Shown: positions 588 through 18,454, counted from the first letter of the stretch. The stretch: DNA of 64,000 nt from Zancudomyces culisetae HAW-14-8 (GCA_052426225.1 JBNJNM010000006.1:1736001-1800000), one strand, 5' to 3'. Numbers and translations: made by a program. Notes: generated by a model from the sequence alone, not told the origin.

Positions 588-2417
588 TAAGCAACGAGTT
601 GTAAAAACCGAGCATGTATGTTTACTCATATTTAACATATGACGTTTTTTCAAATTAAACAAATTATAAAAAATAAATATACAGTATAACTAAATATTTG
701 TTAGTGTAAAAAACTCCTTTGTATGATTATTGGAAAAAATATTTACTTTTAATGATTAATTTTTTGGAGTACTTATCGTTAATTTATACAATTGTTTCAG
801 ATTATGTTAAAGTTTAGAAAAATATTAGGTTTTTACCTTTAAAATAACTTTAATAAATAAAACTAACCTAAACTATTGTCGTGTTGCGATTTATATTGTA
901 ACTTTATTTAGATATACCTAACTTAACTAACCCTATTAACTATCTATCAAAAACGCACTCCCTTATTTCCTTACTCCTTTTTTAGCCTTTTAATCTTCCT
1001 ATTTCCTTATCTCTGACTCTTTGTAAGTTATCCAATTTACGTTAATATTTATTATCGAGAATTACTACTGTCGGCTACGACACTATTAACCCAGTGTACT
1101 AATCAATATTTAATTTGATTGTTCTAGAAGGTTTTGGATTGTATGGGGTGACATATTAAGTAATAATTGTCCCCAGAAATTGCGTAATATTTAACTCATA
1201 TGTGTAATGTTTTTAAATAGGTAATGGATTAGAAAATTAAATTTAGTACTGACTGTTTAATTGATACCTAATCATAATAATGATTTATTATATAAATTTA
1301 TTTATTAATAAATTAAAGTGTATAATAAGTATGTATATATATAACAGTATACATATAAAAATATGTTAGATATTGACTAATATAATCATAAATAAAGTTT
1401 AAATTCAAAAACATTCGAAATATCATATGAGTCACAGAATATTAACAACTAATTATTGTTCGTATTAGAAATTATGCTAGTTTCTCACCTAAATACCCAA
1501 TGCCCGCTCAAATATGCGTAATTAGTGCCTGAGCGTGCAAAATGGAGCATACGAGGTACACACGTACAGTGGTGTAGATTAAATTATGCTTTTCGGATAC
1601 TATATTTATCTAAATTTTAATAATTTTACATTTATAGTTAGAAATTATTTTTTAGTCTATTATATTTCTTTACATAATTTTCAACATTATGATACGTAAT
1701 CAATATTAATTATACAAGTCAAATACACGTCTAGCTTAATTTCAAAAAAAGTAAAAATTCATTTTACAATCAAACTATAAATGCAACTATAAACTATTAC
1801 TACAAAACAAACAAATAAATCTATTTAAATTATATTTATTTTATCACCTTCAAGTATGATAGATATAATTTTAACTATAACAATTGTATATTAATTATAT
1901 CCAAATAATACTGTAAATGATTTGTAGTAAATAAACTTTTAACATATTACTAATATATTTGAATTCAATCTATGTTGAATATATATATATGAATAATAGC
2001 TTCATTCTTTAATTACTAATTTTGTAATATGTTAGATTTTTCAAATAAACAATTAAAGCTTCTAAGCTATAATACACGTTAGAATATTTTAATCACAGTA
2101 ATTATAAGATATATTATTTCCAAACATAGAATTTTCAATTATTAATATCAACAACTATTTACAATAATTATAAGTTTAAAACATAAATACATTTTAACCA
2201 GAATAAAGTTCTCACAATATACGCAATAATGGCATAGAATAAATGTCAAACTAAACTTGTAGCGTGATCCAATGCTTGAGTATAATTGAATATTTAGTGT
2301 TATACCAAACTCAAACATAAATAATCTGAAAAATAAATTAGATACTAGTATAATCTCTATCTGTTTAATTGCAATGTTTCTATAAATCAAAATGTATAAA
2401 TATACGTGAGATAACGT

Positions 2418-2422
2418 AAAAA
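2418..2422 (-). terminator. Pol III T5 terminator downstream of tRNA-iMet (shared by the Glu-iMet pair)
   Basis: Minus strand reads ...GCT-A-CA-TTTTT. No T-run of 4 or more lies between the two tRNAs. Confidence 0.75.
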
Positions 2423-2424
2423 TG

Positions 2425-2496
2425 TAGCACCACCTAGTTTCGATCTAGGGACCTCAAGGTTATGAGCCTTGCGCGCTTCCTCTGCGCTATGGTGCT
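2425..2496 (-). tRNA. Initiator tRNA-Met (CAT)
   Basis: Reverse complement AGCACCA-TA-GCGCAGAGGAAGCGC-G-CAAGG-CTCATAA-CCTTG-AGGTC-CCTAG-ATCGAAA-CTAGG-TGGTGCT-A. A1:U72 pair and ATCGAAA T-loop are diagnostic of eukaryotic initiators. Confidence 0.95.
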
Positions 2497-2498
2497 AA

Positions 2499-2570
2499 TT
2501 CCGCAACGGGGAATCGAACCCCGGCCACGACGGTGAGAGCGTCGGATCCTAGCCACTAGACCATTGCGGA
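2499..2570 (-). tRNA. tRNA-Glu (CTC)
   Basis: Reverse complement TCCGCAA-TG-GTCTAGTGGCTAGGAT-C-CGACG-CTCTCAC-CGTCG-TGGC-CGGGG-TTCGATT-CCCCG-TTGCGGA-A; complete cloverleaf. Confidence 0.95.
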
Positions 2571-2782
2571 TATATTTTTGATGAATAAAATGTATAGTTA
2601 TATATTTTAATTTGGTTTACTGTTTCGTATTATTTTATAATACTAATAATAAACTTTTACTAGAATAGACTGTTTTTCTAATTGTGAATAAAGATGATTT
2701 TATTTTTTCTTCCAAGTGGGAGCTTCATTTAACCCCCAAATATTTGACTAATTAAACTAAAATAACTAACTAATAAAAAACC

Positions 2783-2816
2783 ATTGGACAAAACCACAAG
2801 GGGAAAAAGGTCCAAT
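2783..2816 (-). other. ENE-like U-rich internal-loop RNA element, copy 1
   Basis: Minus RNA AUUGGAC-C-UUUUU-CC-CCUUGU-GG-UUUU-GUCCAAU; a GGGGGUU/AGCUCCC hairpin and AAUAAA follow downstream. Confidence 0.65.
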
Positions 2817-3600
2817 CTAAACATATAAATATAACTAAAAGCAACTTAAATAAAACCGGGGACTAATTCCCCTTATCCTTCTAATCGTATTTCTATACGA
2901 CATTTTGTCGTCAATTTAAATTATCACAATTTATATTTTTTCCCAATGGGTTTTTAATAAATTGCAATGATGGTTAAATTAAATTCACGTAACATCCTTG
3001 TAAATCTGAGAATCACACTGTCATAGATGAGTCATGGGAATCATCTATATATGATTTACAACATCTTTTCCTATTCAGCAAGGGGAAACCCCCTGTTTCA
3101 ATAATATTATTATAATTCATATTTCACATGTTTAAAACAGTTATAACTTTATAATTAAATATATTATAGTAGTAGTTCGTTAGACCCAAAAAATTATATA
3201 AGGGCAAATAATTTCTATCTAGTTTTCGATATGACTTAAGCAAATAAAAATATAAAACTATAATATTCACACGACAATTTTGTGTCGTAGTATTCAAAAC
3301 CCTGAGAGTTCTGAATACTAGTCTCTTCACGTGACATACCGGTTCGGGTATAATCACTGGATATCGATGCACTGCTACCCCGTAGCGTGATATGCATCAA
3401 GGGAGGCTCAGTTGAGCTATTATCCCTATACAATGTCGGTGAGATAGTACTCACGGACATTGACTCCGGGCTTCTACGGATTCGAAGTTGACGAACACTT
3501 TCCGTCAACTCCCCAAGTGTTCGGGGACTTAACACCCCTGTCTCTTGGTCCATGCTACTGCCCCTAGTGCTGTTTGATGAGGGGGAAGAATCTCTATTAG

Positions 3601-4011
3601 TGTCAAGATCTGGAGTCAGGAGAGTTATATTTATTATTATTAAAGTTTATTGTATGAATGTATACAAGATACTAGATACTGAATCCAAGACAGGAAAATT
3701 GTACCCTTTTTATACTTTTTTCCAGCCTTGGTTTTTGAACAAAATCACATGAAAACTGCGGAATAGCTAAAAATGCAAGTTAAAGTAAAACGTGTTTGAT
3801 TACTAATCAAATTGGATTAGTAATCAAACAAAAATCAAACTCGAATGCTAATAAAATTAAATATGTGAAAATTATTACGTAAGAAAAATTAATAAATAAT
3901 GTGAATTTTCGGTAATGTTCTAGAATGTTCCCCAACATTCTAAACATTACTGCGGAATAAAATCAGATGATTCTAGAACGTTTTTGAACATTCTAGAATC
4001 AGTTCATGACA
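3601..4011 (-). repeat. 3' LTR of element 1
   Basis: Direct repeat identical to 8901-9311 by eye. Confidence 0.97.
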
Positions 4012-4023
4012 CGACCTCCCCTC

Positions 4024-7000
4024 TTAAGGCTGAGCTCCGTGAAGCATTTGTGTTGGCTTTGGTTTTTCAGGATGGTGACGATGGAATTCATTGACAAGAT
4101 ATTTTGCATTTGCTAAGTCAGAATATGTTTGCCAGGTACGTTCAGTGTCTGGGTATCCTTTCCAGTGTACCAGGTATTTGACAGTTCTACCAAATATTTT
4201 ACTATCTAGGATTTTCTCAACTTCATATTCTTCTTGACCATCAATGATCACAGGTGGAAGCGGTTTTGATAGTCTGTCTGGGATCAGATCTGGTTTACAA
4301 GGTTCAAGGAGATTGACGTGGAATACTGGGTGAATCTTCATTGTGTGTGGTAGCTGAAGTTTGTATGATCTTTGTCCAATCTTTTCCAATACTTTGAATG
4401 GACCAAGTTTCCGATAGTCAAGCTTCTTGCTTGGTCTTTGAGTCCTGATGTTTTTAGTTGATAGATAGACAAGATCACCAATGTTGAAGTCAGGTTGTGA
4501 TGATACTTTTCGGTTGTAGTATTTCTCATGGTCTTCAAGGGCAAGGGAGATGTTAAACTTCAGTTCTTGGTGGATATCAGATAGTCGTTTGGATCTATCA
4601 GAGGAGGCAGGATTTAAAACTTGAGTACGAGGGATTATGACTGAGAAGCGTGGATGGAAGCCATAGTTGGCGTAGAAAGGTGTGGTTTTAGTAGAAGCAT
4701 GAGATGTGTTGTTGTAGGCGAATTCAGCAATTGGTAACCACTTTGACCAATCAGTTTGTTGGTAATCAATGTAGCACCTGAGATACTGTTCCAATACTGA
4801 GTTTACGCGTTCAGTTTGTCCATCTGTCTGAGGATGGAATGCGGTGGACATTTTCTGTTCAATATTCAGTGATTTCATTAGAGTACGCATGAATGATGAA
4901 TTGAAGGTCACACCTCTATCAGATACGATGTCTTTAGGGAGCCCATGTTTGCAGAAGACATGTTGGATAAATAGATCTGCAGTACCTTCAGCATCAATTT
5001 CATTGGTTGTGGGAACAAAATGCGCCATCTTGGTAAGGCGATCCACAAATACACAGATTGCAGTAAAGTTATTGGATGGAGGTAGCTGAGTGATGAAGTC
5101 GACAGAAACAGATGACCAAGGTGAATCAGGAACGGGAAGTGGAGCGAGGTAGCCATATGGTTTATGGCGAGAGGATTTGTTGCGTTGACAGGTATCGCAA
5201 CCAGAGATGTAGTCTTTGATATATTTTCTCATGGTTGGCCAGTAAAAGTTGCGAGATACAAGTTCGTATGTCTTTGCATTTCCAAAGTGGCCGGCAGCAG
5301 GGGAATCATGGCATTCAATCAGAATTGTTCTTTTGATGTTGTCGTCTGAGGGGATACAGATTAGTCCATCATAGTGCAGAAGATTGTCAACAAGAGCGAA
5401 CTTTTCATGGGAATCAGGTTTCTTGGATAAGTCAGTGTAAATGGGTCCAAAGTACTTGTCTTTGGGTTGTAGTGACTTGATGTTGTTCATGAGCGTGGAG
5501 GACAAAGGTTCAACAGGTGTACTAGTCATGGACTTCAAGAAGATTTCAGGAGGCAGCAAAGTTATTTTGTTTTGGTCAGTACGGGAGTCACCCCCCTTCC
5601 AAGGTTGGTCTTTCCGAGAAAGAGCATCGGCGGCAGTGTTCTGTTTTCCAGGGCGGTACTTGATGACAAAGTTGAAGTTACTGAGGTATTCTGACCATCT
5701 GACTTGGCGGCGACTAAGATTTCTGGTAGTGGAGAAGTATTCCAAGTTTTTATGGTCGGTCATAACAACGGTTGGGTGTACAGAAAATTCAAGGTAGTGA
5801 CGCCAGTGAGCAAAAGCGTCGATAATTGCTAACAGTTCCTTATCATAGATTTGATAATTCACTTCAGCAGGCAGGAGTTTCCGGGAGTAGTATGCAACAG
5901 GGTGGAGTTGTCCCTCGTTGTCATACTGGCTGCAAATGGCACCTAATGCAAAATCTGATGCATCGGTTTCGATGATACAAGGCTGGTCAGGATTGTAGTG
6001 AGCTAAGACTGGGTTACTGATCATGGTTTCTTTTAGCAAGGCGAAAGCTTCTTCAGCTTTGGGTGTCCACTGGAATTGAACACCTTTTTTCAACAAGGCG
6101 GTGAGTGGCAGAGATATCTTGGAGTAGTTCAGAATAAAACGGCGGTAGAAGTTTGTAAGGCCAAGGAATACCTGAACGTCACGGACACAAGTTGGTGTCT
6201 TCCATTCGGTGACGCTGGATACTTTTGATGGATCCATAGAGATTCCGTTGGGGCCAATTACAAAACCGAGGAACTGTACTGATTGTACATCAAACTCACA
6301 TTTCTCTAGCTTGAGGGTGAGATTGTGTTCCTGAAGCTTCTTCAAGACAAGGCAGACGTGGTCATAGTGCTTATCGATATCATCTGAGTAGATTAACAGA
6401 TCATCGATGTACACAACAAGGAATTGATCAATGTATTCACGGAAGAGATCGTTAACAAAGGACTGGAACGTGGCTGGAGCATTCATAAGGCCAAACGGCA
6501 TGACCTTATACTCGAAGTGGCCGTAGCGTGTACGAAACGCGGTCTTCCATTCTTCACCAGGCGAGATCCTGATCATGTGGTATGCGGATTTCATATCCAG
6601 CTTGGTGAATATCTTGGCTTTGCCAAGCCGATCCAAGGTTTCAGAGATGAGTGGCAAGGCTGCACGGTTGGGGACAGTGATCTTATTCAGGGCTCTATAG
6701 TCGACGCACAACCGGAGACTACCATCTTTCTTTTTTACAAATAGGACGGGAGCCCCAGCCGGGGATTCAGAGCGTTGGATAAAACCATTGGCTAGGTTTT
6801 CCTGAATGTAGTCGTACAGGGTCTTTAGTTCCAATTGGGAAAGGTTGTACAATGGGCCATATGGTATCTTTGAGTCAGGAAGCAAAGGAATGGTATGATC
6901 ATATGGACGATGTTCAGGCAGTTTGGCAGATTGGGATTCAGAGAAGACAGATTCAAACATTTTATACTTTTCAGGGATTACAGGAGTAACAGGGTTTTTA

Positions 7001-7641
7001 AGAGAAGATTCAGAGACAAGACAGAGATTTTCACAAGATTTAGGAGCTACAAGAGATTCAAGATTGTTCACGGTAATTGCACCAGCATAGACAGTGTCTG
7101 GTGCCTTCAGATGTTCTTTAAACTGGTTTGAGCCCACAAGAGAGATGTCTAGGTTGACATGGTTGGGCCCACAAGAAGTCAAGGTACAAGGCAGATGGAC
7201 TATGTTCTCAGTCCAGTTGATGTCAGGATTGTGTTGTTGAAGCCAGGAAAGACCAAGGATGATTGGTGAAGATCCAAGATCTAGTTGTTGCAGATAGATA
7301 CTTTCGAGATGGTTATCATTGATTTTTAGTGTTACTTGGGAGGCAGAGTTGGATCTAAGCTTTGATCCGTCAGCGAGCGTGATTGTCATTTTTCTAGATA
7401 TAGATGGTAGATTGTTTTTTAGAGCAAAGGTGGCGTCAATGAACGAGGACGAAGCACCAGAATCAACCATAGCGTAGGTTTTGATGTGGTGGTGCTTGGA
7501 CAAGATGGTTACAGGAATGGTCAAGGTGTTTGGTTTATCAGGAGATTGGGTGTCAGAAACAGGAGTGGTTACAGTGGCGTGGGGACTGGCTAAGTTGCCC
7601 AATAGGTGTCCCTTACTGTCTACTGGGCGGTGTCGTTTTCC
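4024..7641 (-). CDS. pol: Pol polyprotein of element 1 (protease, RT, RNase H, integrase, chromodomain), entered by -1 frameshift from gag
   Basis: MVDSGAS protease, YIDD RT, RNase H (TDASD...YDKELLA), HHCC zinc finger, DDE core (VDF/SDRG/GQTER), GPF module, chromodomain YEVEKILD...YLVHWKGY...TW. Confidence 0.96.
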   Translation of the reverse strand, partial: GKRHRPVDSKGHLLGNLASPHATVTTPVSDTQSPDKPNTLTIPVTILSKHHHIKTYAMVDSGASSSFIDATFALKNNLPSISRKMTITLADGSKLRSNSASQVTLKINDNHLESIYLQQLDLGSSPIILGLSWLQQHNPDINWTENIVHLPCTLTSCGPNHVNLDISLVGSNQFKEHLKAPDTVYAGAITVNNLESLVAPKSCENLCLVSESSLKNPVTPVIPEKYKMFESVFSESQSAKLPEHRPYDHTIPLLPDSKIPYGPLYNLSQLELKTLYDYIQENLANGFIQRSESPAGAPVLFVKKKDGSLRLCVDYRALNKITVPNRAALPLISETLDRLGKAKIFTKLDMKSAYHMIRISPGEEWKTAFRTRYGHFEYKVMPFGLMNAPATFQSFVNDLFREYIDQFLVVYIDDLLIYSDDIDKHYDHVCLVLKKLQEHNLTLKLEKCEFDVQSVQFLGFVIGPNGISMDPSKVSSVTEWKTPTCVRDVQVFLGLTNFYRRFILNYSKISLPLTALLKKGVQFQWTPKAEEAFALLKETMISNPVLAHYNPDQPCIIETDASDFALGAICSQYDNEGQLHPVAYYSRKLLPAEVNYQIYDKELLAIIDAFAHWRHYLEFSVHPTVVMTDHKNLEYFSTTRNLSRRQVRWSEYLSNFNFVIKYRPGKQNTAADALSRKDQPWKGGDSRTDQNKITLLPPEIFLKSMTSTPVEPLSSTLMNNIKSLQPKDKYFGPIYTDLSKKPDSHEKFALVDNLLHYDGLICIPSDDNIKRTILIECHDSPAAGHFGNAKTYELVSRNFYWPTMRKYIKDYISGCDTCQRNKSSRHKPYGYLAPLPVPDSPWSSVSVDFITQLPPSNNFTAICVFVDRLTKMAHFVPTTNEIDAEGTADLFIQHVFCKHGLPKDIVSDRGVTFNSSFMRTLMKSLNIEQKMSTAFHPQTDGQTERVNSVLEQYLRCYIDYQQTDWSKWLPIAEFAYNNTSHASTKTTPFYANYGFHPRFSVIIPRTQVLNPASSDRSKRLSDIHQELKFNISLALEDHEKYYNRKVSSQPDFNIGDLVYLSTKNIRTQRPSKKLDYRKLGPFKVLEKIGQRSYKLQLPHTMKIHPVFHVNLLEPCKPDLIPDRLSKPLPPVIIDGQEEYEVEKILDSKIFGRTVKYLVHWKGYPDTERTWQTYSDLANAKYLVNEFHRHHPEKPKPTQMLHGAQP

Positions 7642-8840
7642 TGTGTAGGTGTAATGCTGGAGATGTTGTGGCGTTTCTTTGGACAGTTGATGTTGAAATG
7701 GTCATTACCGCCACAATAGAGACAGAGGTTGTTTTCGATACGGTATGCTCTTTGAGCAGGAGTAAGTGGTGGTCTTCTAGTCGATGAAGCGGTACTGAGA
7801 TCCATTGGTTGAGGTCCATCACTATTAGCTGGTGGAGTGGTAGATGGTGCAGAAACAGGTGAAGCAAACGGGTTGTAAGCAGTAGGTTTGGGTGGCATAG
7901 TTGCAGTGGGGTTAACTGGAGGTTGACGACGTTGTGGATGGCTGAAGAGGCGGTTGTCGATCTGGATGGCTGTGGAGATCAGGGTATCGATGTCTTCTAT
8001 TGGTTCTCTACGGTTGAGTTCTTGGGATACGTTGTACTTGAGACCGGATAGAAACTGTGAGATAAGTGGTGGTTGGTTCCAGTCAATTAACATCTGTAGG
8101 CGTCTAAACTCGGTGGCATATGCGGCAACGGAAGTGGTTTGTCTGAGTTGGCGGATTGCCCTATCAGCATTCTCAATAGGGTTGGGATCACCAAAGGCAC
8201 GAGTGATAGTTTCTTTAAACAGATTGTAGTTGGAGAGGATGGCAGGACGGTCAGATTCTGGAAGGTTTGCTTTCATGAGATAAGGTTCCATGTAACTGAA
8301 TGGTGTGCCTGAGAGGTAGGAGATGGCATACAAGACTTTACTTGAGTCAGTGTTGAATTTGTCGGGTGAAGCGGCAAAGACGAGAGCAAGCTGTGAAAAG
8401 AAGTTGGAACAGGCGGAGGGTTTTCCGGAAAATGTGTCTGGGTGTCTGACTTTGATACTAGGTTCAGAAGTACTAGCAGGTTTGGTGGCACGGTTTTCAG
8501 TTATATAAAGTATGACTTCGTTCCTGAGGGTACTGAGCTGGTCCTGAAGGGATTGGATTTCCAACTGGTTGGCCTGTATGGCGCTTTGGGTCAGCTGGTC
8601 TGAATTCTGGATATCGGACTGGAGGTTTTTCATGGAGTCAAGAATGGTCTGGATGGACTTGGTGGTGTCTGCTTTGACCTTGTCATAAATTTTCTTGGAT
8701 ACTGTGGCAGGGTGTTCCTTGATGGCAGACTCGGCTTTTTCTACTCTTATTAGTAGTTGCTGGAGGGCGTCTTCAACTGCTGGCAGGGTCACGGCGGCTT
8801 TGTTGAGGAATTCAACTTGTTCTGGGCTAAACGGTTCCAT
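7620..8840 (-). CDS. gag: Gag of element 1 (N-terminal coiled coil, capsid, CCHC zinc knuckle)
   Basis: 406 aa; PDTFSG...FFSQL capsid motif, LRQTTSVAAYATEF, CLYCGGNDHFNINC knuckle. Confidence 0.94.
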   Translation of the reverse strand: MEPFSPEQVEFLNKAAVTLPAVEDALQQLLIRVEKAESAIKEHPATVSKKIYDKVKADTTKSIQTILDSMKNLQSDIQNSDQLTQSAIQANQLEIQSLQDQLSTLRNEVILYITENRATKPASTSEPSIKVRHPDTFSGKPSACSNFFSQLALVFAASPDKFNTDSSKVLYAISYLSGTPFSYMEPYLMKANLPESDRPAILSNYNLFKETITRAFGDPNPIENADRAIRQLRQTTSVAAYATEFRRLQMLIDWNQPPLISQFLSGLKYNVSQELNRREPIEDIDTLISTAIQIDNRLFSHPQRRQPPVNPTATMPPKPTAYNPFASPVSAPSTTPPANSDGPQPMDLSTASSTRRPPLTPAQRAYRIENNLCLYCGGNDHFNINCPKKRHNISSITPTQENDTAQ

Positions 8841-8900
8841 AGTTAAAATACTTAGGCTGGTGTCAGAAAATAATAAATATAATATTTTGATCTAGTATAG

Positions 8901-9311
8901 TGTCAAGATCTGGAGTCAGGAGAGTTATATTTATTATTATTAAAGTTTATTGTATGAATGTATACAAGATACTAGATACTGAATCCAAGACAGGAAAATT
9001 GTACCCTTTTTATACTTTTTTCCAGCCTTGGTTTTTGAACAAAATCACATGAAAACTGCGGAATAGCTAAAAATGCAAGTTAAAGTAAAACGTGTTTGAT
9101 TACTAATCAAATTGGATTAGTAATCAAACAAAAATCAAACTCGAATGCTAATAAAATTAAATATGTGAAAATTATTACGTAAGAAAAATTAATAAATAAT
9201 GTGAATTTTCGGTAATGTTCTAGAATGTTCCCCAACATTCTAAACATTACTGCGGAATAAAATCAGATGATTCTAGAACGTTTTTGAACATTCTAGAATC
9301 AGTTCATGACA
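8901..9311 (-). repeat. 5' LTR of element 1
   Basis: Identical to 3601-4011; contains sense TATAAAAA (9014-9007) and HSE arrays. Confidence 0.97.
9271..9298. promoter_or_regulatory. Extended heat-shock element in U3 of element 1 (also 3971-3998; a second 3-unit HSE at 9218-9230 and 3918-3930)
   Basis: TTC-ta-GAA-cg-TTt-tt-GAA-ca-TTC-ta-GAA: six alternating nGAAn units at 5-bp phase, one imperfect. Confidence 0.7.
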
Positions 9312-10407
9312 CCTAGATTCATTCGCACCTGTACCGAAAAGATAGTTGATCATTATTTTTACTTTTATTTGTGCTGCTGTTTACAAATCTTTATTTAGAT
9401 AATCTTTATTACTAATCCGTATGGTAGGACATGAATGATGGTTTCTTTTCCACCATGTATCCTTTAAATATAAACTATAAAATCATTTTGTTCTCCAAAT
9501 AGACTATAAACATGATAAGATATAACTAATAAAATAATATTTAGGTTTGATAATATTGATGTAGTATGAACATGTATTTGAACATTTCCCATACTACATT
9601 CATCATTATTGAATGGACGCAGTATGAAGAATTAATTTCATGCTGAGTCCATTAATTTTCATTTTCTTAATTTTTTTTAAATTATGTCCAAATTTTAATT
9701 CAACTATGTAAAATAAGGAAATGTATAACCATGCATTAATACTGGTTGAATAGTTTTACTCATTCGACATTTGTTATATTTTATTATTAAATATAAGTAT
9801 TTACTATAATTGTTCTATAATATTTTTTCAAGTTATTTTTATTAACTATAATAAGGTAATTATATCTTTAACTAATTATTTTCTGTATGTTTTTCTTTAT
9901 TTTGTCAAATATTTCATTTTTTTATACATTTTTTCTTTCTAAGTAAAAATTATTTTAAACTAAGATACTGAAACTAAACTTCTTTAATACTAAAACAATA
10001 AATTACTATTAAAAATTATATGACTAAACAAACGTTTGTATTGCGACACTATGAGTCATCAGAAAAAACTAGATGACGTTATTTTCATCGATAGTGAAAA
10101 AAAACTGATCCTCATTAGTTATCGCAAACTAATAATTTGTTCGTTTGCATGATGACTAATTAATTTGTCATCATGCTCTCCTGCCCACTATATGACAATT
10201 TTGTTAAAATAAGATTATTGTAATATATTGTTCTCTACTTATTTATTATCACTATACTATATTTGTTTTAACAATATAATCTGTATACTTAATATTATTC
10301 TGATAGTTTGAGAAAACAATTGTTTTTATTTTTCTTGTTGTGGGAGGTCCTTTTGACCCCTAAAATTGTTCATACTAGTCTGAAATAAATTATACCTATA
10401 AAATAAC

Positions 10408-10442
10408 ATCGGACAAAAACCACGAGGGGAAAAAGGTCCAAT
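10408..10442 (-). other. ENE-like RNA element, copy 2
   Basis: Minus RNA AUUGGAC-C-UUUUU-CC-CCUCGU-GG-UUUUU-GUCCGAU (U-G wobble on this strand); GGGGUC/GACCUC hairpin and AAUAAA downstream. Confidence 0.65.
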
Positions 10443-10735
10443 CTAAAAATACTGCTAATTTCCTAATACTATAATTCTAAAAACTATTGAATTTTTGTTC
10501 TAATCATATTATTATATGACAATTTTTGTTATGATTAAATTTTATTTTATTACTTAACTATGTATTTCTAAATAACTAACGATAAATTTTGGTTTATTGT
10601 ATATACTATGTTAAAACTTAGACTTATAATTTGTTTGTTAAGAGTTACTTTATTTCAATTCTGTGGGCGTTGTCTTAAATCCCGAAACATTCAGGTTAAA
10701 AAATATCTAAATAAACTATTCAACTATAATTAATC

Positions 10736-10770
10736 GCTGGACAAAAACCACGAGGGGAAAAAAGTCCAAT
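10736..10770 (-). other. ENE-like RNA element, copy 3
   Basis: Minus RNA AUUGGAC-UUUUUU-CC-CCUCGU-GG-UUUUU-GUCCAGC; about 100 bp (10411-10510 vs 10739-10838) is near-identical to copy 2. Confidence 0.65.
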
Positions 10771-11405
10771 CTAAAAATACTGCTAATTTCCTAATACTAT
10801 AATTCTAAAAACTATTGAATTTTTGTTCTAATCATATTTTCATATGACATTTTGTCGTATAAAATATTATAGGTTATAGATTTCTCATCTATATTAACTA
10901 ATAGTGTTATTTTATTGGTTATTTATTTAATAGTTTTTGTAGTTGATTTTGTAGTATTTAAATCAATGAAATTTTTAGTTAAATAAATTTGTCGTCTCTT
11001 GAATATAATAATAGTACATATAAATATTTATAAATAGTAACTATTAGCGGCCCGTCACGTGTAGCGCTTGGAACCAATAGCTTTCAAGTAGGACGTAAAA
11101 CATTTTTACTACACGACACAAGATGTAATATTTTATTTATTATTTAAAATATTTTATACCCGTTATGGGTATAAGTGTCTAAACACCGTGCTATTTACAT
11201 TCAAGAGAGAGTTTAAACTATCTTGTTGCGTAACTAACAATTATGGAGGCGTAGACAGTCTTTTTTTATATTATACTATTTATTTATTCCTCTTATAAAA
11301 TATATAAAATTTATATAATATTAACTTCTATCTAAAAATTATCTCAATAAAAAACTGATAACAAAAGAACCTATTATCAGAGAAGTCAGATAAAACCCTC
11401 TTCGG

Positions 11406-11814
11406 TGTCAGGACCTGACAACTAAGTATTATTTTATTTTATATTATTTAGTTATTTAAAGTAGTATATATCTTGTGAAGATATTTTATTGCTGAAGTTC
11501 TCTTTCAATAAAATCTATGGCTATATATACTTTTCCAAAACTACTAAAAAACTATGAAAAACATTGTTATAACTATATAGAAAATTCTAGAATGTTAGAA
11601 TTCTAGAATGATTAATAATCAATTGATTAGTAATGTAAAACGTGTAATTGCGCAGCAAAATGTCGTAATTTTAACACGTTTCTAAATTACCTAATCTACT
11701 GCGCAATCAACAAAATTAAATTTCCCAAAATGATTTTTGAGAAAATTGCGCAGCAATTTAGTAATTAAATACAACACGTGTATTTAATTACAAATGGCAT
11801 GATAAATCATGACA
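11406..11814 (-). repeat. 3' LTR of element 2
   Basis: Direct repeat identical to 16354-16762. Confidence 0.97.
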
Positions 11815-12405
11815 TCATCCCTCTCTAATGCTGGCACGCGGTCCTGGCTTTTCTGGATATCTGGCATGGAACTTGGCAACGAGGTCAGGTGCATGAACGT
11901 CTTCAGCATATTCCCATGTCCGATCTTCAGGACTGTATCCTTTCCAATCAATCAGATACTTTAATTTCCTTTTAACAAACTTGGAGTCCAGGATAGAAGA
12001 TACTTCGTATTCTTCTTGATTGTCTAATATGATAGGAGGTGGGGGTGGTTGGGTACGGTTAGAATATGATGTCTGTTTATGTGGTTTAAGCAGGGACACG
12101 TGGAAGACGGGATGAATTTTCATATTGTCAGGTAGCTTGAGTTTAGCAGTTACAGGATTGACCATCTCAATAATTTCAAATAGACCAATGTATTTGAAGT
12201 CTAACTTGTGCGATGGTCGCATAGTCTTGATATTGGCTTGAGAAAGCCATACTTTGGAGCCTGGCTTGAAGTCTTGGGTATCTGATCGTTTTTTCGTCAG
12301 CAAAACGTTTATAGTTACTCTTGGCAGTTTCTAGATGTAACTTGAGTTGGTCTTGAATGTTTTTCAGATGAGTAGCAAATTCTAGCGCACTAGGTACTTT
12401 GGAGT
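11815..12405 (-). pseudogene. C-terminal remnant of element-2 integrase (GPY/F-like module plus chromodomain)
   Basis: DSKVPSALEFATHLKNIQDQLK...RFADEK, then a frameshift in an A6 run, then RSDTQDFKPGSKVWLS...KIHPVFHVSLLK...YEVSSILD...YLIDWKGY...TWE. Confidence 0.88.
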
Positions 12406-15400
12406 CAGAGGTTCTGGAACATAGACTAGGCCCTTGTATCTGACTAGGCCATCTGTGACTGTGAGCTTTGAGGACGGTAACTTGGACTTGGTTATCAGGG
12501 CTTGGGCTTCGTTACTGGTCTTGGTCATGGATAGTATCATTGACATGAGATCGCTGGACTGGCTAGTATCTATTGAACCAACGATAATCTTAGGCTGCCA
12601 AATGGGACGGGGATCAAGATTATCTACCCCCCTCTTATGCTCATCTTTTCGGGATAGAGCATCGGCCTTTCCGTTCTGAGTTCCTGGCCGGTAAGTCAAT
12701 TCAATGTCGAATCTGGTTAGGAAAAGTGCCCACCTGGCTTGTCTCTGGTTAAGTATTTTGGCTGAGCGAAAATATTCCAAGTTTTTGTGGTCTGTGATTA
12801 CAAGGACAGGATATGAGGCACCTTCCAAGTGATGTCTCCATTGTTCAAGAGCGCATTTAATTGCGAGCAGCTCCTTATCATAGATGTGATAGTTCTGTTC
12901 CGCAGGGTTAAGGGTTCTGGAATAGAAGGCTACTGGATGTGTGACACCATCGTGCTTCTGAGACAGAACAGCACCGAGAGCATAGTTTGAAGCATCACAC
13001 TCCAGTATGAACTGTTTGTTGGGGTCCGGGTGCGCAAGAACTGGTGAGGAGGTACATTTGGCTTTTAGCTCTTCAAATGCTGACTGTTGAGCGGAGCCCC
13101 AGATAAACTGGGCATTTTTCTTTAACAGTGAAGTAATTGGTTGTACTATCTTGGAGTGGTTATCAATGAATCGGCGATAGAAGTTGACAAAGCCTAGGAA
13201 TACTTGAATGTCCTTTACAGATTGTGGTGTGGCCCAGTCTTTGATTGCGGCGATACGTGAGGGGTCCATGGATAATCCGGCAGGCGTGATGACATATCCC
13301 AGAAAATCCACTCTATCCTTGTCAAACTCACATTTTTCTAGTTTGGCATAGAGTTTGTTTTTTATTAGGCGTTCAAGTACAGATCGGACATGAAGTGTAT
13401 GCTCTTCAGGACTTGCGGAGAATATGAGAATGTCATCCAGATATATGACAACATACAAATCAAGTATGTCTCTGAAGATATCATTGACAAAAGACTGGAA
13501 CGTTGCAGGGGCATTTGCAAGCCCAAATGGCATTACTCTATACTCAAAGTGACCATACTGTGTGCGGAAAGCAGTTTTTTCCTCGTCACCTTTACGAATA
13601 CGCACGAGGTTGTATGCATCACGAAGATCGAGTTTGGTGAAGATCTTGGATTGCTGTACTCTTTCTAGCAGCTCAGTCATCAACGGTAATGGATACCGGT
13701 TGCGTATGACGACCTTGTTGAGCTCTCTGTAGTCAACGACGAGTCTTAGTGAACCATCTTTCTTACCCGTGAAAAAGACGGGTGCGGCAGCAGGAGACTT
13801 GGATTTAACAATAAACCCCTTGGCTAGGTTTTCATCGATATACTCTTTGAGGACTTTCCTTTCTTTGGGAGCCAGAGGGTAGATTGGGCCATACGGTAGC
13901 TTAGCATCAGGAACCAGGTCTATGGGGCAATCGTATTCTCTGTGAGGTGGTAAGGTGTCAGCCATTTGTTTATCAAAGGCTTGGCGGAGATCATGGTATT
14001 TGGCAGGAATGGTAACTTCTTCGGTCGTTGGTAGACTAGGCTTGGCTTGGCTGATGAGACCAATCATGTGTGATACTGTAAGTTTCTTTTTCTTGGTGGG
14101 GTACGGCTCGTTCAGTATGATGTTACTTGGGCGTTTTCTGATTGGTTCCACTGGGTCTGCAGGTGGTGGGGTCATTGGTCTAATCATGAGTGGGATTGGT
14201 GGAATGGGTGGAGCCTCATCCATTGGTAGGTCTAGGTATTCAGAGGCACTGGAACTATCGGATGTGGAGGATTGCGTTTCCATACTCATTTCTGAACAAG
14301 ACGAGGAGTCAGAAAGGTAGTTAGCATCTAAGATAGATTCTAACTCAAAAGTATCAGTAGGATCAAAGTGGGAATCATTGAGGATGTCTACTTGGTGAGG
14401 CTCCTGTTCATCATGGATTTGGGTTTCTTGGCTTTGAGTTTGGGTACCTTGGCAGTGGAAATCTTGGACTTTGGTTTCTTGATTGTTGTTAGCTCGGCTG
14501 TGGTCTTCTTGGACTTGTGGTTTGCTGTGGTTTCCTTGACTATTGATTCCTTGACTATTGATTCCTTGACTATTGTTTTCTTGGCTGTGGTTTTCTTGGC
14601 TGTGGTTTTCTTGGTTATGGGTTATAATTGCATGGCTGTGGTTTTCTTGGCTGTGGTTATCTTGGACTTTAGTTTGGCTGTGGTTTTCTTGGCTATGGGT
14701 TTTAATTGCATGGCTGTGGTTTTCTTGGCTGTGGTTATCTTGGACTTTAGTTTGGCTGTGGTTTCTTTGACTACTGTTTACTATAGGTAAACCCATTGGT
14801 TGATATGATTGTAGCCCTGGTGGTGTTCCGACTATAGGTCCGGTCTCATAATTGAACTGTCGCTTACGTTGTTTAGTACATCTTTTTTTGAAAGTATTCT
14901 TTAGAAGTTTAAAACAATTCTTGTTACAGTAGTCTTTGTCAAACAATATGGAACGGGATTTCCAATTAATAGCAGGGTCATGAAGTTCTAGCCACGGGAG
15001 ACCCAAAATCATATCAGCATGATAACAAGTCATAACGTCGAATACAGCTAGTTCACAGTGGTTACTTTGAATCTGAATCTTGAGTGGCTTGGTGTGATGG
15101 GTAATTGGGCCTTCGGTCAACGGACTACCATCTATGAACTCAACTGAGACTGGGTCTTTCTTGGCTTGGGTACGAATATGCTTTGAGTCTACAATTTTCT
15201 TGTTGATAAACATTCCTGAAGCACCTGAATCGATCATGGCCATGATCTTAAAGCTGAGCTTGCTTGGCATGTGGACTGTGACAGGAATCATAAAACGGTG
15301 TGGATGGTTAAGGACGGGGTTAGGACTTTGTTTTGGAACTGTCATAGACATGGGTTCGGACTTCATGGAAACTGTGGAAGCATCTTGTAGGTTCAGGGTT

Positions 15401-15435
15401 TGCTTCCGTTCTGAACCTGAACCTATTGGTTTCCC
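12382..15435 (-). CDS. pol: Pol of element 2 (protease, repeat-rich linker, RT, RNase H), truncated before the integrase zinc finger
   Basis: MIDSGAS, YLDD, CDASN...YDKELLA; ends VYVPEPL followed by an out-of-frame stop. Confidence 0.92.
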   Translation of the reverse strand, partial: GKPIGSGSERKQTLNLQDASTVSMKSEPMSMTVPKQSPNPVLNHPHRFMIPVTVHMPSKLSFKIMAMIDSGASGMFINKKIVDSKHIRTQAKKDPVSVEFIDGSPLTEGPITHHTKPLKIQIQSNHCELAVFDVMTCYHADMILGLPWLELHDPAINWKSRSILFDKDYCNKNCFKLLKNTFKKRCTKQRKRQFNYETGPIVGTPPGLQSYQPMGLPIVNSSQRNHSQTKVQDNHSQENHSHAIKTHSQENHSQTKVQDNHSQENHSHAIITHNQENHSQENHSQENNSQGINSQGINSQGNHSKPQVQEDHSRANNNQETKVQDFHCQGTQTQSQETQIHDEQEPHQVDILNDSHFDPTDTFELESILDANYLSDSSSCSEMSMETQSSTSDSSSASEYLDLPMDEAPPIPPIPLMIRPMTPPPADPVEPIRKRPSNIILNEPYPTKKKKLTVSHMIGLISQAKPSLPTTEEVTIPAKYHDLRQAFDKQMADTLPPHREYDCPIDLVPDAKLPYGPIYPLAPKERKVLKEYIDENLAKGFIVKSKSPAAAPVFFTGKKDGSLRLVVDYRELNKVVIRNRYPLPLMTELLERVQQSKIFTKLDLRDAYNLVRIRKGDEEKTAFRTQYGHFEYRVMPFGLANAPATFQSFVNDIFRDILDLYVVIYLDDILIFSASPEEHTLHVRSVLERLIKNKLYAKLEKCEFDKDRVDFLGYVITPAGLSMDPSRIAAIKDWATPQSVKDIQVFLGFVNFYRRFIDNHSKIVQPITSLLKKNAQFIWGSAQQSAFEELKAKCTSSPVLAHPDPNKQFILECDASNYALGAVLSQKHDGVTHPVAFYSRTLNPAEQNYHIYDKELLAIKCALEQWRHHLEGASYPVLVITDHKNLEYFRSAKILNQRQARWALFLTRFDIELTYRPGTQNGKADALSRKDEHKRGVDNLDPRPIWQPKIIVGSIDTSQSSDLMSMILSMTKTSNEAQALITKSKLPSSKLTVTDGLVRYKGLVYVPEPLTPKYLVR
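14390..14770 (-). repeat. Coding minisatellite of 15-nt units (QENHS/QDNHS/QGINS) in the protease-RT linker
   Basis: Repeated ttggctgtggttttc / ttgactattgattcc on the + strand, with a higher-order 26-aa duplication (QTKVQDNHSQENHSHAI.TH.QENHS twice). Confidence 0.9.
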
Positions 15436-16316
15436 GGCTTGGGCTTCTTGGATTTTTCTGGGCAATTTTGGGCTTGGTGCTTTTCACCACCACAGTAGAA
15501 GCAAAGTCCAAGTTTCATTCTACGGTCACGTTCAGGCTGGGATACAGTGCGATGAACACTGTCTACTTGCATGGGTTCTGTGGTTTGCGTGGTGGTTGAT
15601 ATTGATGGTTGGATTCCTCTGCGTCTCCTGGCTTTCTCTTCCTTCCGTCTGGTGAGTCTGGTGTCAACTGTGATGGCTGCATTGATATACCCTTCTAGGT
15701 CTGAAGGTGTCTGGAACAAGGCAAGGGTATCCAAAATGTTTTCGTTGAGACCTTCTGCGAACTGGGATACGAGAGCGGACTCGTTCCAGTCTAGGTCCAT
15801 CATGAGTCTTCTGAACTCAGAAGAGTACATTGATACTGTTGTAGAACCTTGGCGGAGCGCACGGATGGCGTCGTTTGCGGTCTGTGTTCGTTGTGGGTCA
15901 TCGAACACCTTTGAGAACTCCTTCATAAAGAGTTCATAATCTTGGAGCACTGGGCTACCCTTCTCAATATAAGGGCTTGCCCATCTTAGTGCGTTTCCAG
16001 TAAGAAGAGACATGATCAACCCTACCTTATTGGTTTGGGACGGGTAGTGGTCAGGATGAGTAAAGAATAGAAGACGGCATTGATTCGTGAAACCTCTGAA
16101 CTGACTTCGGTCTCCATCGTACCTCTCTGGCAAGGCAATTCTGGCTGATGGGACATGGGCTGGAAACTGAGCGGGAGCTTGGGCTGGGGCTTGGACTGGC
16201 AAGGCGGTAGGTACTGGCTGATCTTGGGTTGCGGCTTGCAACGCTTGTAACCTGGCATTCTCTTCTCTGAGAGCTTGGAGTTCGGCAGTTAACTGGTTTA
16301 ACTGTTCGTCATTCAT
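15423..16316 (-). CDS. gag: Gag of element 2
   Basis: 297 aa; PERYDGDRSQFRGF capsid motif, LRQGSTTVSMYSSEF, CFYCGGEKHQAQNC knuckle. Confidence 0.94.
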   Translation of the reverse strand: MNDEQLNQLTAELQALREENARLQALQAATQDQPVPTALPVQAPAQAPAQFPAHVPSARIALPERYDGDRSQFRGFTNQCRLLFFTHPDHYPSQTNKVGLIMSLLTGNALRWASPYIEKGSPVLQDYELFMKEFSKVFDDPQRTQTANDAIRALRQGSTTVSMYSSEFRRLMMDLDWNESALVSQFAEGLNENILDTLALFQTPSDLEGYINAAITVDTRLTRRKEEKARRRRGIQPSISTTTQTTEPMQVDSVHRTVSQPERDRRMKLGLCFYCGGEKHQAQNCPEKSKKPKPGNQ

Positions 16317-16353
16317 GGTAAAATAATAGGTAGTTGAAGTAGCAATAAAATAA

Positions 16354-16762
16354 TGTCAGGACCTGACAACTAAGTATTATTTTATTTTATATTATTTAGT
16401 TATTTAAAGTAGTATATATCTTGTGAAGATATTTTATTGCTGAAGTTCTCTTTCAATAAAATCTATGGCTATATATACTTTTCCAAAACTACTAAAAAAC
16501 TATGAAAAACATTGTTATAACTATATAGAAAATTCTAGAATGTTAGAATTCTAGAATGATTAATAATCAATTGATTAGTAATGTAAAACGTGTAATTGCG
16601 CAGCAAAATGTCGTAATTTTAACACGTTTCTAAATTACCTAATCTACTGCGCAATCAACAAAATTAAATTTCCCAAAATGATTTTTGAGAAAATTGCGCA
16701 GCAATTTAGTAATTAAATACAACACGTGTATTTAATTACAAATGGCATGATAAATCATGACA
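16354..16762 (-). repeat. 5' LTR of element 2
   Basis: Identical to 11406-11814; sense TATATATA at 16477-16470; HSE GAA-aa-TTC-ta-GAA at 16528-16540. Confidence 0.97.
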
Positions 16763-18195
16763 TTCGGGAGAAAAGTCCAATCTTCTCACAAGTAAATAAT
16801 AACTAATAAATAATAAACGAGAAACTGGTATTACCTAATATTGTAGTCCAGGGGTAATGACGCCAATTTTATATGACAAAGATGTTGTATGCTTAGTTCT
16901 ACCCAAGCTAAACTATTGGATGAACAGCATACAGCTTCTCAAACACCGAATAACCACCGTTATCTCGGGTGTTCGAGCAAGAAATCTGGGATTTCTTGGG
17001 TAATAAATTACCCAAATGTTGGAGAAATATTCAGTTTTAATTGTTTTATTTTAAGTTTCTATTATATAAAGTTCTAATAAAATAGCTAGTCAGGTACTAG
17101 TATATTACTAGTAACCCCACCACAAGTTTGGTGGTTTTATCTTTTTATTTTTAAAAGTTATTCATTAAATAAAATACAAATTAGCTCTAAAATACTTGAT
17201 TTTTTTCTATAAAATTGAAATTTGTGATTTGAGCAAAAACCTACCTAAAACCAAAAAAAAACATAGGTAGTGAAGCGTAACACAATTTTCAAAGGGTATC
17301 AGAAAGGTATCAGAGTCTAATTTTTGGACCAAAATTGATTGTTTTGCACACCAAATTTTAGGAGTTGGGCGTAATTTTACCCAGTTTTATCGCATTTATT
17401 GAAATAATAAATACATAAAACTAAATTAAATATAAGCTAAAAAGGTAGGGTTGACTGGTTAAATAAAGTAAAACTTATTCCAGTAACAATCCCCCTCTAT
17501 TAGCAGAACTTTTTGTAGGTTTAGTTGCGGAAATTTCCTGAGAAATTTTCTGGAAACTAAAATTACAACAACAAATGTCATATAGTGGCTAGACGAGGTT
17601 ATGACTAGTTAATTAGTCATAACGTTATTTAATAAAGCCGCTACCTTGTGGGGATTAGTTGTTTATATCGATAAAGCAATGTAGTCGATACCTTTTTCTA
17701 ATGACTCACAGTTATTAATTATTATTCATTAATATTTTTAGTCCAGATTTATTAATAGCAAATTTTATTATATAAGTGATTTCTACTTGAATCAGGATAT
17801 TCAGAATAATCAAAAAAAAAGTATAAAAAGCGTAGAATTTTATACAAAATAAAAAGATGAGACACATAAAAAACTAGTTATACCGTCTATAATAACTTTA
17901 ACAATACTTAGATAACAATAAGTATAAAGTTTATTATAATATAAATAGTAAATAAAATCAACTATATTTCAAGACTGTCGTATAATTTATAAATTATTTT
18001 TTAAGTCGAAAACTCGATGATGAATTTATTTAGAATTTTGTTGCCTTATTATACTTTTTTTAGACAACCAATTTACTAAACACTAAATTTATACTTAACT
18101 AACTAATAATTAAATCATACTAAATTAAATTATGCTGTTTCCCCGTGTAGTTGATTATTTGCTTTTATCAGGTTATCAAATTCACATGTCGTGGT

Positions 18196-18380: not shown

Positions 18381-18454
18381 GCTTCCATGGCGCAATTGGT
18401 TAGCGCGTCTGACTGTTAATCAGGAGGTTGCTAGTTCAAGCCTAGCTGGGAGCG
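18381..18454 (+). tRNA. tRNA-Asn (GTT)
   Basis: GCTTCCA-TG-GCGCAATTGGTTAGCGC-G-TCTGA-CTGTTAA-TCAGG-AGGTT-GCTAG-TTCAAGC-CTAGC-TGGGAGC-G followed by TTTATTTTTT. Confidence 0.95.

What the first reader, a model, noticed from the sequence alone, without database searches (positions are those of the whole stretch)
2700..16890. Repeat family carrying ENE-like poly(A) triple-helix elements (four copies, all minus strand)
Seen: at 2783-2816, 10408-10442, 10736-10770 and 11380-11405+16768-16787 the minus RNA folds as lower stem / U4-6 / short C-G upper stem-loop / U4-5 / lower stem. Most stem differences give G-U pairs on the minus strand but A-C mismatches on the plus strand. Copies 1-3 are followed about 50-60 nt later by a G-rich hairpin ending CCCAC (weak in copy 3) and then AAUAAA; copy 4 has AAUAAA about 90 nt downstream. 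Each is preceded 70-90 nt upstream by an ACGACA-nnn-TGTCGT-like palindrome. Known: this is the architecture of the KSHV PAN and MALAT1 ENE, and ENEs occur in plant and fungal transposon RNAs. Inferred: these are 3' ends of an unidentified mobile-element or ncRNA family that protects its poly(A) tail. Motif blocks are conserved while spacers have diverged.
Basis: partly seen in the sequence, partly recalled or inferred. Interest (0 to 1): 0.85.

Follow-up and report, generated by a model that had tools for sequence, protein, structure and literature searches.

The report
ENE-like hairpin in retrotransposon LTRs
The four repeats are end-repeats (LTRs) of retrovirus-like elements that insert just upstream of tRNA genes in a mosquito-gut fungus, and they share a small, evolutionarily maintained RNA hairpin shaped like the known elements that clamp and protect a poly(A) tail, though that function is not shown here.

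Summary
The motif occurs four times on the minus strand (0.08 expected), and a fifth, diverged copy lies on the plus strand (core 2936-2955).

The repeats are LTRs of Ty3/gypsy retrotransposons whose 3' LTR ends 5-10 bp upstream of tRNA genes. The region 2.6-16.9 kb reads as one stack of such insertions anchored at tRNA-Glu/iMet and widened by two chromoviruses, one of which splits copy 4. The genome matches the Zancudomyces culisetae HiFi assembly.

The hairpin (lower stem, U4-8, 2-3 bp C-G cap, U4-7, lower stem) lies on the sense strand 20-100 nt from the LTR 5' end. AATAAA usually follows 70-90 nt later. At least 148 copies exist.

Within the main clade the stem hardly varies. Across LTR families the same core is enclosed by at least eight unrelated lower stems (11 of 16 classes against 14% for permuted flanks), with one clean G-C to A-U swap. 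So the structure is selected.

A poly(A)-binding ENE is the best reading (about 0.55) but is unproven: transcript ends are unknown, the cap is very short, and Rfam gives no match. ENEs inside fungal and plant LTRs are already described, so this is a new member of a known kind. Other windows of this scan noted the same motif.

The parts
2783..2816 (-). Hairpin copy 1: 7-bp lower stem AUUGGAC/GUCCAAU, loop C+U5 / U4, cap CC-CCUUGU-GG
2579..2902 (-). Complete 324-bp solo LTR of family C (TG...CA) carrying copy 1. It ends 8 bp upstream of tRNA-Glu
2716..2737 (-). Conserved G-rich block ending in CCCAC (GGGGG...CUCCCAC). Hairpin potential only
2699..2704 (-). AATAAA, the presumed poly(A) signal, conserved in position across LTR families
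2424..2570 (-). Dicistronic tRNA-Glu(CUC)/tRNA-iMet gene, the anchor of the LTR stack
2926..2965 (+). Fifth, diverged hairpin copy (class e): stem CAAUUUAU/AUAAAUUG, U6, cap CCC-AAU-GGG, U5. It lies in a plus-strand LTR whose 5' end (TGTCGTC) is at 2907, head-to-head with the copy-1 LTR
3598..9312 (-). Chromovirus A (gag; PR-RT-RH-IN-chromo; identical 415-bp LTRs). It lacks the hairpin and widens the stack
10408..10442 (-). Hairpin copy 2 (one U-G wobble in the lower stem)
10202..10521 (-). Solo LTR F2 carrying copy 2
10737..10769 (-). Hairpin copy 3
10527..10849 (-). Solo LTR F3 carrying copy 3. It is separated from F2 by a re-duplicated AAAAT
16763..16787 (-). 5' half of hairpin copy 4 (J-type LTR whose 5' end is at 16878)
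11380..11400 (-). 3' half of hairpin copy 4
11406..16762 (-). Chromovirus B with identical 409-bp LTRs and a CCGAA target duplication, inserted into the cap of copy 4

Best explanation
The repeats are LTRs of a clade of Ty3/gypsy retrotransposons that integrate 5-10 bp upstream of tRNA genes. In the 5' part of each LTR, on the sense strand, sits a small hairpin: a lower stem, two facing U-tracts forming an internal loop, and a 2-3 bp C-G cap.

Inferred mechanism: because the genomic RNA is read through the 3' LTR up to a poly(A) site just after the conserved AATAAA, the hairpin lies in the 3' UTR roughly 100 nt before the tail. The tail folds back into the U-rich loop, forming U-A-U triples clamped by the flanking G-C pairs. 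This protects the retrotransposon RNA from deadenylation and decay, as single-domain ENEs do.

Shown here: the identity of the elements, the position and strand of the hairpin, and selection on the structure. Inferred: transcript boundaries, poly(A) binding and stabilisation.
For: Parent elements.
- Intact 5.2-5.7 kb copies have PR-RT-RH-IN polyproteins, TG...CA LTRs, a purine tract, and tRNA-Asn or tRNA-Arg primer sites.
- Every intact copy has a tRNA gene 5-10 bp after its 3' LTR on the same strand.

Abundance and divergence.
- At least 148 model hits in the genome, mostly same-strand pairs 4.7-5.4 kb apart.
- Families are only about 60% identical in Pol and 32-40% in Gag, yet keep the hairpin.

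Shape and specificity.
- The shape is specific: 3 hits in 128 kb against 0.175 in shuffles, none in the chromovirus LTRs on their sense strand.
- MFE folds give the ENE-like shape in families C, D, F and I and in rejoined copy 4.

Selection on structure.
- The same U/CC..GG/U core is enclosed by at least 8 unrelated lower stems.
- 11 of 16 non-main classes have a stem of 5 bp or more, against 13.8% for permuted flanks (P 7e-7). With related classes collapsed it is 7 of 12 (P 4e-4).
- One compensatory G-C to A-U change separates classes f and f'.
- Caps differ in sequence and length but always open CC and close GG.

Position.
- The hairpin is in sense orientation in every recognisable LTR.
- AATAAA lies 70-87 nt downstream in most families.

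Literature.
- ENE layout and the need for G-C pairs next to the U-rich loop: PMC12501189, PMC7583470.
- ENEs embedded in LTRs of plant and fungal TEs are described: PMC13541005.
Against: - No transcript start or poly(A) site is known. TATA-like words occur on both sides of the hairpin, so the U3 or R assignment is open.
- The cap is only 2 G-C pairs with a 6-nt loop in the main clade, and folding energies do not beat shuffles.
- In family J the preferred fold pairs part of the 5' U-tract. H needs a bulge and has a competing fold. Young family N has an A-C mismatch in the stem.
- Class e has no G-C pair next to the loop on the lower side.
- Within the main clade there is almost no covariation, and the 5' strand is nearly invariant, which suggests an extra sequence-specific constraint.
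- No Rfam family matches, even at E up to 10.
Confidence: 0.55

Rival explanations
1. The hairpin is a selected RNA (or single-stranded cDNA) structure with a role other than clamping the tail. Examples are a Gag/nucleocapsid packaging or dimerisation signal, an upstream enhancer of 3'-end processing, or a structure used in strand transfer.
For: Structure selection is shown, but nothing ties it to poly(A). The hairpin is found throughout the tRNA-targeting clade and is absent from the two chromoviruses in the window, so it could serve clade-specific replication biology. The very short cap is unusual for described ENEs.
Against: The constant features are exactly those an ENE needs: two facing U-tracts of 4 or more, and C-G pairs directly next to them. 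Stems and apical loops vary freely. A packaging or dimerisation signal would more likely conserve loop sequence. It lies at the 3' side of the RNA, upstream of AATAAA.
Confidence: 0.22
2. The block is a DNA-level U3 promoter module: inverted CCAAT boxes (ATTGG ... CCAAT) with poly(dT) tracts and a C-rich, STRE-like core bound by host factors. The hairpin potential is a by-product.
For: In the main clade the lower-stem strands read ATTGG and CCAAT. ATTGG is kept in 13 of 15 family representatives, and the 11-nt 5' strand is almost invariant, more than pairing alone requires. Class d has an ATTGG about 20 nt upstream of a hairpin whose stem lacks it. U3 regions normally carry such sites.
Against: The 3' CCAAT is intact in only 5 of 15 representatives, yet stays complementary through G-U pairs. 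Seven other stem classes have no CCAAT at all but keep a stem. A DNA site does not predict sense-strand-specific wobble tolerance or compensatory changes. This reading may still add a second constraint in the main clade.
Confidence: 0.15
3. The U3 block pairs with the primer tRNA, as in the bipartite primer-binding site of yeast Ty3.
For: The elements are Ty3-like and tRNA-primed. Short identities to tRNA D-loop words exist.
Against: The best LTR-tRNA duplexes are no better than with shuffled tRNAs. Families using different primers (tRNA-Asn, tRNA-Arg) share the hairpin.
Confidence: 0.02

Closest known systems
Single-domain ENE of KSHV PAN RNA and related viral ENEs
   Same: A stem-loop with a U-rich internal loop of about 5 x 5 nt, closed on both sides by G-C pairs, placed roughly 100 nt upstream of the poly(A) site on a polyadenylated RNA (PMC7583470, PMC13541005).
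   Different: The cap helix is only 2-3 bp with a 3-9 nt loop. The internal loop is often asymmetric (U5-8 against U4-7, sometimes with 1-3 extra bases). No Rfam match. No evidence of triplex formation or stabilisation.
ENEs of plant and fungal transposable elements (Tycowski et al. 2016, as cited in PMC7583470, PMC13541005 and PMC12501189), including the tested Arabidopsis Evade (Copia93) ENE
   Same: An ENE-like hairpin carried by an LTR retrotransposon in the 3' untranslated part of its RNA. LTR-embedded ENEs are a described category. The proposed role is protecting the TE RNA from deadenylation.
   Different: [quoted passage not shown] Here it is a single minimal domain inside the LTR of Ty3/gypsy elements of a zoopagomycete fungus, shared by 15 or more LTR families. 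The 2016 paper itself was not held in the library, so whether this species was in its list could not be checked.
tRNA-gene-targeting LTR retrotransposons (yeast Ty3, Dictyostelium DGLT-A, fission-yeast Tj1)
   Same: Ty3/gypsy polyprotein order, tRNA-primed, integration a few bases upstream of tRNA genes, repeated hits producing stacks.
   Different: Many co-existing families, with orientation mostly locked to the tRNA gene, and a shared U-rich hairpin in the LTR. To my knowledge (not checked in the held literature) such a hairpin has not been described for Ty3, DGLT-A or Tj1.

Membership tests
ENE (poly(A)-binding triple-helix stability element) | Stem-loop with a U-rich internal loop: two facing U-tracts of about 4-6 nt | tested here: met
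   MFE folds of families C, D, F, I and rejoined copy 4. Generic shape scanner. U-tracts of 4 or more on both sides in all classes.
ENE (poly(A)-binding triple-helix stability element) | G-C pairs directly flanking the U-rich loop | tested here: inconclusive
   The cap side always opens CC and closes GG. The lower side is C-G in the main clade and classes b and f, but A-U or a C-A mismatch in J and A-U only in class e.
ENE (poly(A)-binding triple-helix stability element) | Helices supported by covariation | tested here: met
   None within the main clade. Across LTR families there are 8 or more unrelated lower stems around one core: 11 of 16 against 13.8% for permuted flanks, collapsed 7 of 12, P 4e-4, plus one G-C to A-U swap.
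ENE (poly(A)-binding triple-helix stability element) | Lies on the sense strand near the 3' end of a polyadenylated transcript | tested here: inconclusive
   Sense strand of every recognisable LTR. AATAAA is 70-87 nt downstream in most families and 100-150 nt in J, N and H.
ENE (poly(A)-binding triple-helix stability element) | Match to a curated ENE covariance model | tested here: not met
   No Rfam 15 family at gathering score, nor at E up to 10 around copies 1-4. Which ENE models the library holds was not checked.
ENE (poly(A)-binding triple-helix stability element) | Binds oligo(A) as a triple helix and stabilises an intronless or deadenylation-prone RNA | not testable with these tools
   Needs UV melting or gel shift and reporter or half-life assays.
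Ty3/gypsy LTR retrotransposon, tRNA-targeting type | LTRs with TG...CA ends, tRNA-complementary PBS, purine tract, PR-RT-RH-IN order | tested here: met
Ty3/gypsy LTR retrotransposon, tRNA-targeting type | Integration at a fixed short distance upstream of Pol III genes | tested here: met
   The 3' LTR ends 5-10 bp before a tRNA gene, on the same strand, for every intact copy examined in families C, D, E and H, and for the window's copy 1.
CCAAT-box (NF-Y type) promoter element | Strict conservation of the CCAAT pentamer | tested here: inconclusive
   The 5' ATTGG is kept in 13 of 15 main-type representatives and the 3' CCAAT in only 5 of 15. It is absent from stems of classes b-h.

The most novel reading that the evidence does not exclude
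The hairpin is not a tail clamp but a clade-specific cis signal of tRNA-targeting Ty3-like elements. It would be a U-loop recognised by the element's Gag/nucleocapsid or by a host U-tract-binding factor, and used for packaging, strand transfer or coupling to the Pol III neighbourhood. It is found throughout the tRNA-targeting families and absent from the chromoviruses in the same genome.
Probability: 0.12. Interest if true: 0.7.

Novelty: new member of a known kind. Interest (0 to 1): 0.5.

Why it matters
If the hairpin is a working ENE, this genome offers a large natural series of ENE variants: at least 148 copies and 15 or more LTR families, with at least eight different lower stems and several caps around one U-rich core. 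That is a ready-made mutational map of what a minimal ENE tolerates, including a cap of only 2-3 base pairs.

It would extend LTR-embedded ENEs to an early-diverging fungal lineage and to tRNA-targeting Ty3-like elements. It would also suggest that tail protection helps these elements stay active in a compact genome.

Independently of function, the hairpin is a practical marker for annotating LTRs of this clade. It also explains a motif that first-stage readers flagged repeatedly across this genome.

Tried and rejected
- Organelle origin: rejected. The window has nuclear-type tRNAs and retrotransposons.
- Rfam: no ENE or other family at gathering score or at E up to 10.
- Folding-energy z-scores: uninformative. 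The values are -0.6 to -1.8, and the antisense strand folds about as well.
- Covariation within the main clade: none in the 9-sequence alignment. The 'both sides changed' cells in the 66-row model-fitted alignment come one per pair from low-scoring rows. I first treated these as junk, but at least one (L016:2231) later proved to be a real class-f homologue.
- Strand-asymmetry test: 19 against 7 transitions, but P is only 0.07 after background correction, and the excess vanishes if the outermost pair is counted.
- G-rich 'hairpin' before AATAAA: my first impression of compensatory changes did not survive RNAalifold. Only an invariant GGG/CCC core remains.
- Bipartite primer-binding site (U3-tRNA pairing): no complementarity beyond shuffled tRNAs.
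- Literature: Tycowski et al. 2012 and 2016 are not in the held library. A hit combining 'triple helix' and Ty3 in a zoopagomycete genome paper concerned collagen domains.
Full report
**1. What is at the coordinates**

The window is AT-rich nuclear DNA with three tRNA genes.

A scanner that looks only for the shape was run on both strands of the window. The shape is a U-run, a hairpin closed by two G-C pairs, a second U-run, and an enclosing stem of at least 5 bp.

Copy 4 is split by a chromovirus at 11406-16762 that has identical 409-bp LTRs and a CCGAA target duplication. Rejoined in a script, it folds into an 11-bp lower stem, a U-rich loop and a CCC/GGG cap.

**2. What the repeats are**

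Copy 1 lies inside a complete 324-bp LTR, from TG at 2902 to CA at 2579. The LTR ends 8 bp upstream of the dicistronic tRNA-Glu/tRNA-iMet gene.

The same LTR flanks intact 5.2-kb elements elsewhere. L031 is an example: one 1,501-aa PR-RT-RH-IN polyprotein, a PBS matching 17 nt of tRNA-Asn(GUU), a purine tract, and a tRNA gene about 5 bp after the 3' LTR.

Other families carry the motif in their LTRs:
- D (LTR pairs 4,938 bp apart)
- E (5,692 bp)
- H (4,898 bp; 419-bp LTR; tRNA-Arg primer)
- About ten further subfamilies

A covariance model finds at least 148 copies in the genome, mostly as same-strand pairs 4.7-5.4 kb apart. Every intact copy examined has a tRNA gene 5-10 bp after its 3' LTR on the same strand. 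The families are about 60-64% identical in Pol and 32-40% in Gag.

In the window, the stretch from 2.6 to 16.9 kb reads as one stack of such insertions anchored at tRNA-Glu/iMet:
- C LTR, 2579-2902
- A plus-strand LTR starting at 2907
- Chromovirus A, 3598-9312
- Solo LTRs F2 (10202-10521) and F3 (10527-10849), separated by a re-duplicated AAAAT
- A plus-strand LTR, 10854-11117
- A J-type LTR starting at 16878, split by chromovirus B

In front of copies 1 and 3 it abuts the 5' terminus of an oppositely oriented LTR.

The genome has 27.09 Mb in 25 contigs. Its contig C12 is 2,524,970 bp long, which is exactly the N50 reported for the PacBio-HiFi assembly of Zancudomyces culisetae (27.18 Mb, 26 contigs; PMC12611240). 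That paper does not mention LTRs or tRNA targeting.

**3. Anatomy of the LTR**

In 13 family representatives the hairpin starts 67-102 nt from the LTR 5' end. In other classes it starts 20-36 nt from the end. It is always on the sense strand.

In most families, AATAAA follows 70-87 nt after the hairpin, with a G-rich/CGCCCAC block just before it. In J, N and H the distance is 100-150 nt. That G-rich block has only an invariant GGG/CCC core and no covariation.

In family C the polyprotein ORF ends 10 nt inside the 3' LTR. If AATAAA is the poly(A) signal, the 3' UTR is essentially the first two thirds of the LTR, with the hairpin in its middle. TATA-like words occur on both sides of the hairpin, so the U3/R boundary cannot be set from sequence alone.

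**4. Is the structure real?**

Several tests are weak or negative:
- Folding energies do not beat shuffles. This is expected for an open internal loop.
- Within the main clade the stem is almost invariant, so covariation is nil.
- Counting events per LTR cluster, pairing-compatible transitions outnumber incompatible ones 19 to 7 in the inner eight pairs. After allowing for a mild C>T over G>A background bias this gives P = 0.07. It disappears if the outermost pair is included.

The decisive evidence comes from more distant LTR families present in the loci I held. Scanning 594 kb for the bare core (U-run, CC...GG, U-run) shows the core enclosed by at least eight unrelated lower stems:
- UUGGAC/GUCCAA (main clade, J, partly H)
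- UUACACGG/CCGUGUAA
- GUAAC/GUUAC
- UAUUCC/GGAAUA (with the same cap as family C)
- CAAUUUAU/AUAAAUUG
- GUAUGGG/CCCAUAC
- UGCACA/UGUGCA
- GAGUC/GACUC

Taking every non-main core class regardless of its flanks, 11 of 16 have a flanking stem of at least 5 bp, against 13.8% when 5' and 3' flanks are permuted between classes (P 7e-7). With related classes collapsed it is 7 of 12 (P 4e-4); this count includes one probable chance hit in coding sequence. For stems of at least 7 bp it is 5 of 12 against 6.2% (P 5e-4).

Classes f and f' differ by a G-C to A-U double change at one pair.

Caps vary in sequence and length but always open CC and close GG next to the U-tracts. Examples are CC-CCUUGU-GG, CCC-ACU-GGG, CC-UAUGA-GG, CCC-UAUGGA-GGG, a 4-bp CCAA/UUGG cap, and an 8-bp stem in family I.

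One of these diverged copies lies in the window itself on the plus strand (core 2936-2955), so the window has five copies, not four.

**5. What it most likely does**

The conserved features are two facing U-tracts, G-C pairs directly next to them, and any stem below. The apical loop is free to vary. These are the defining features of ENEs as described for PAN RNA and for TE ENEs (PMC7583470, PMC13541005). For the Arabidopsis Evade element, U-to-C and flanking G-C mutations abolish the oligo(A)-dependent transition, and deletion lowers RNA stability and mobility (PMC12501189).

The position, on the sense strand roughly 100 nt before the presumed poly(A) site, fits. I therefore take a minimal single-domain ENE as the best explanation, at about 0.55.

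Points against:
- The cap is very short.
- Family J prefers a fold that uses part of the 5' U-tract. H has a competing fold. Young family N carries a stem mismatch.
- Class e lacks a G-C pair below the loop.
- No Rfam family matches.
- Nothing is known about the transcripts.

**6. Rivals**

- A structured RNA with another role, such as packaging, dimerisation or 3'-end processing, is not excluded (0.22).
- A U3 promoter module of inverted CCAAT boxes fits the near-invariant ATTGG strand of the main clade. It fails for the 3' strand (CCAAT intact in 5 of 15) and for the seven other stem classes. It may be a second, superimposed constraint (0.15).
- Pairing with the primer tRNA, as in Ty3's bipartite PBS, is not supported.

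**7. Novelty**

ENEs in TE RNAs of plants and fungi, including ones embedded in LTRs, are a described category (Tycowski et al. 2016, as cited in PMC7583470, PMC13541005 and PMC12501189). If real, this is a new member of a known kind. It is unusual for its minimal cap, its spread over a whole clade of tRNA-targeting elements, and its host lineage.

The 2016 paper was not available, so I could not check whether this species was already listed.

Other first-stage notes in this scan flagged the same ENE-like hairpin in other windows of this genome, and other follow-ups described the tRNA-anchored stacks. I tested both points independently here.

Noticed in passing
window 2424-2570; loci L009, L011, L022, L025, L028, L114: Many tRNA genes in this genome are dicistronic pairs with spacers of 0 to 3 nt: Glu-iMet, Ser-Val, Lys-Ala, Phe-Leu, Gly-Ser and Thr-Thr.
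   Followed up: partly
window 18381-18454 (+): The tRNA-Asn(GUU) gene in the window is the primer tRNA of retrotransposon families C, D and E. Its 3' end matches their PBS over 17 nt. Families H and K use tRNA-Arg(ACG).
   Followed up: yes
window 2400-3300 versus L002 (G000:C6:1715873-1719128) and L003/L004 on contig C10: The copy-1 LTR, its flanks and the tRNA pair recur 100% identical in inverted orientation about 21 kb away on the same contig. They also recur at 99.5% identity as an inverted pair on another contig, so these are recent segmental duplications.
   Followed up: partly
window 11815-15465 (-): Chromovirus B has identical LTRs, but its pol is split. One ORF holds PR-RT-RH and a separate 162-aa ORF holds only the SH3-like and chromo domains. 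The integrase zinc finger and catalytic core are missing.
   Followed up: partly
G000:C12:1892518-1899699: Four model hits with identical score lie on one strand at a constant 2,379-bp spacing. This is a tandem array containing the hairpin-bearing LTR rather than a normal LTR pair.
   Followed up: no
window 3695-3735 and 8995-9035 (+): The LTRs of chromovirus A carry a U6/CCAGCCTTGG/U5 core on their antisense strand, with no enclosing stem. This is probably a chance look-alike.
   Followed up: partly
window 10854-11117 (+): A probable 264-bp plus-strand LTR has inverted termini (TGTCGT...ACGACACA) and a compact ATTGGTTCCAAG palindrome, but no U-rich hairpin.
   Followed up: no
L115 (minus strand) 1699-1766: In family H an A5 run just upstream of the hairpin can pair with the 5' U-tract. 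This gives a competing fold that is the minimum-energy structure.
   Followed up: no
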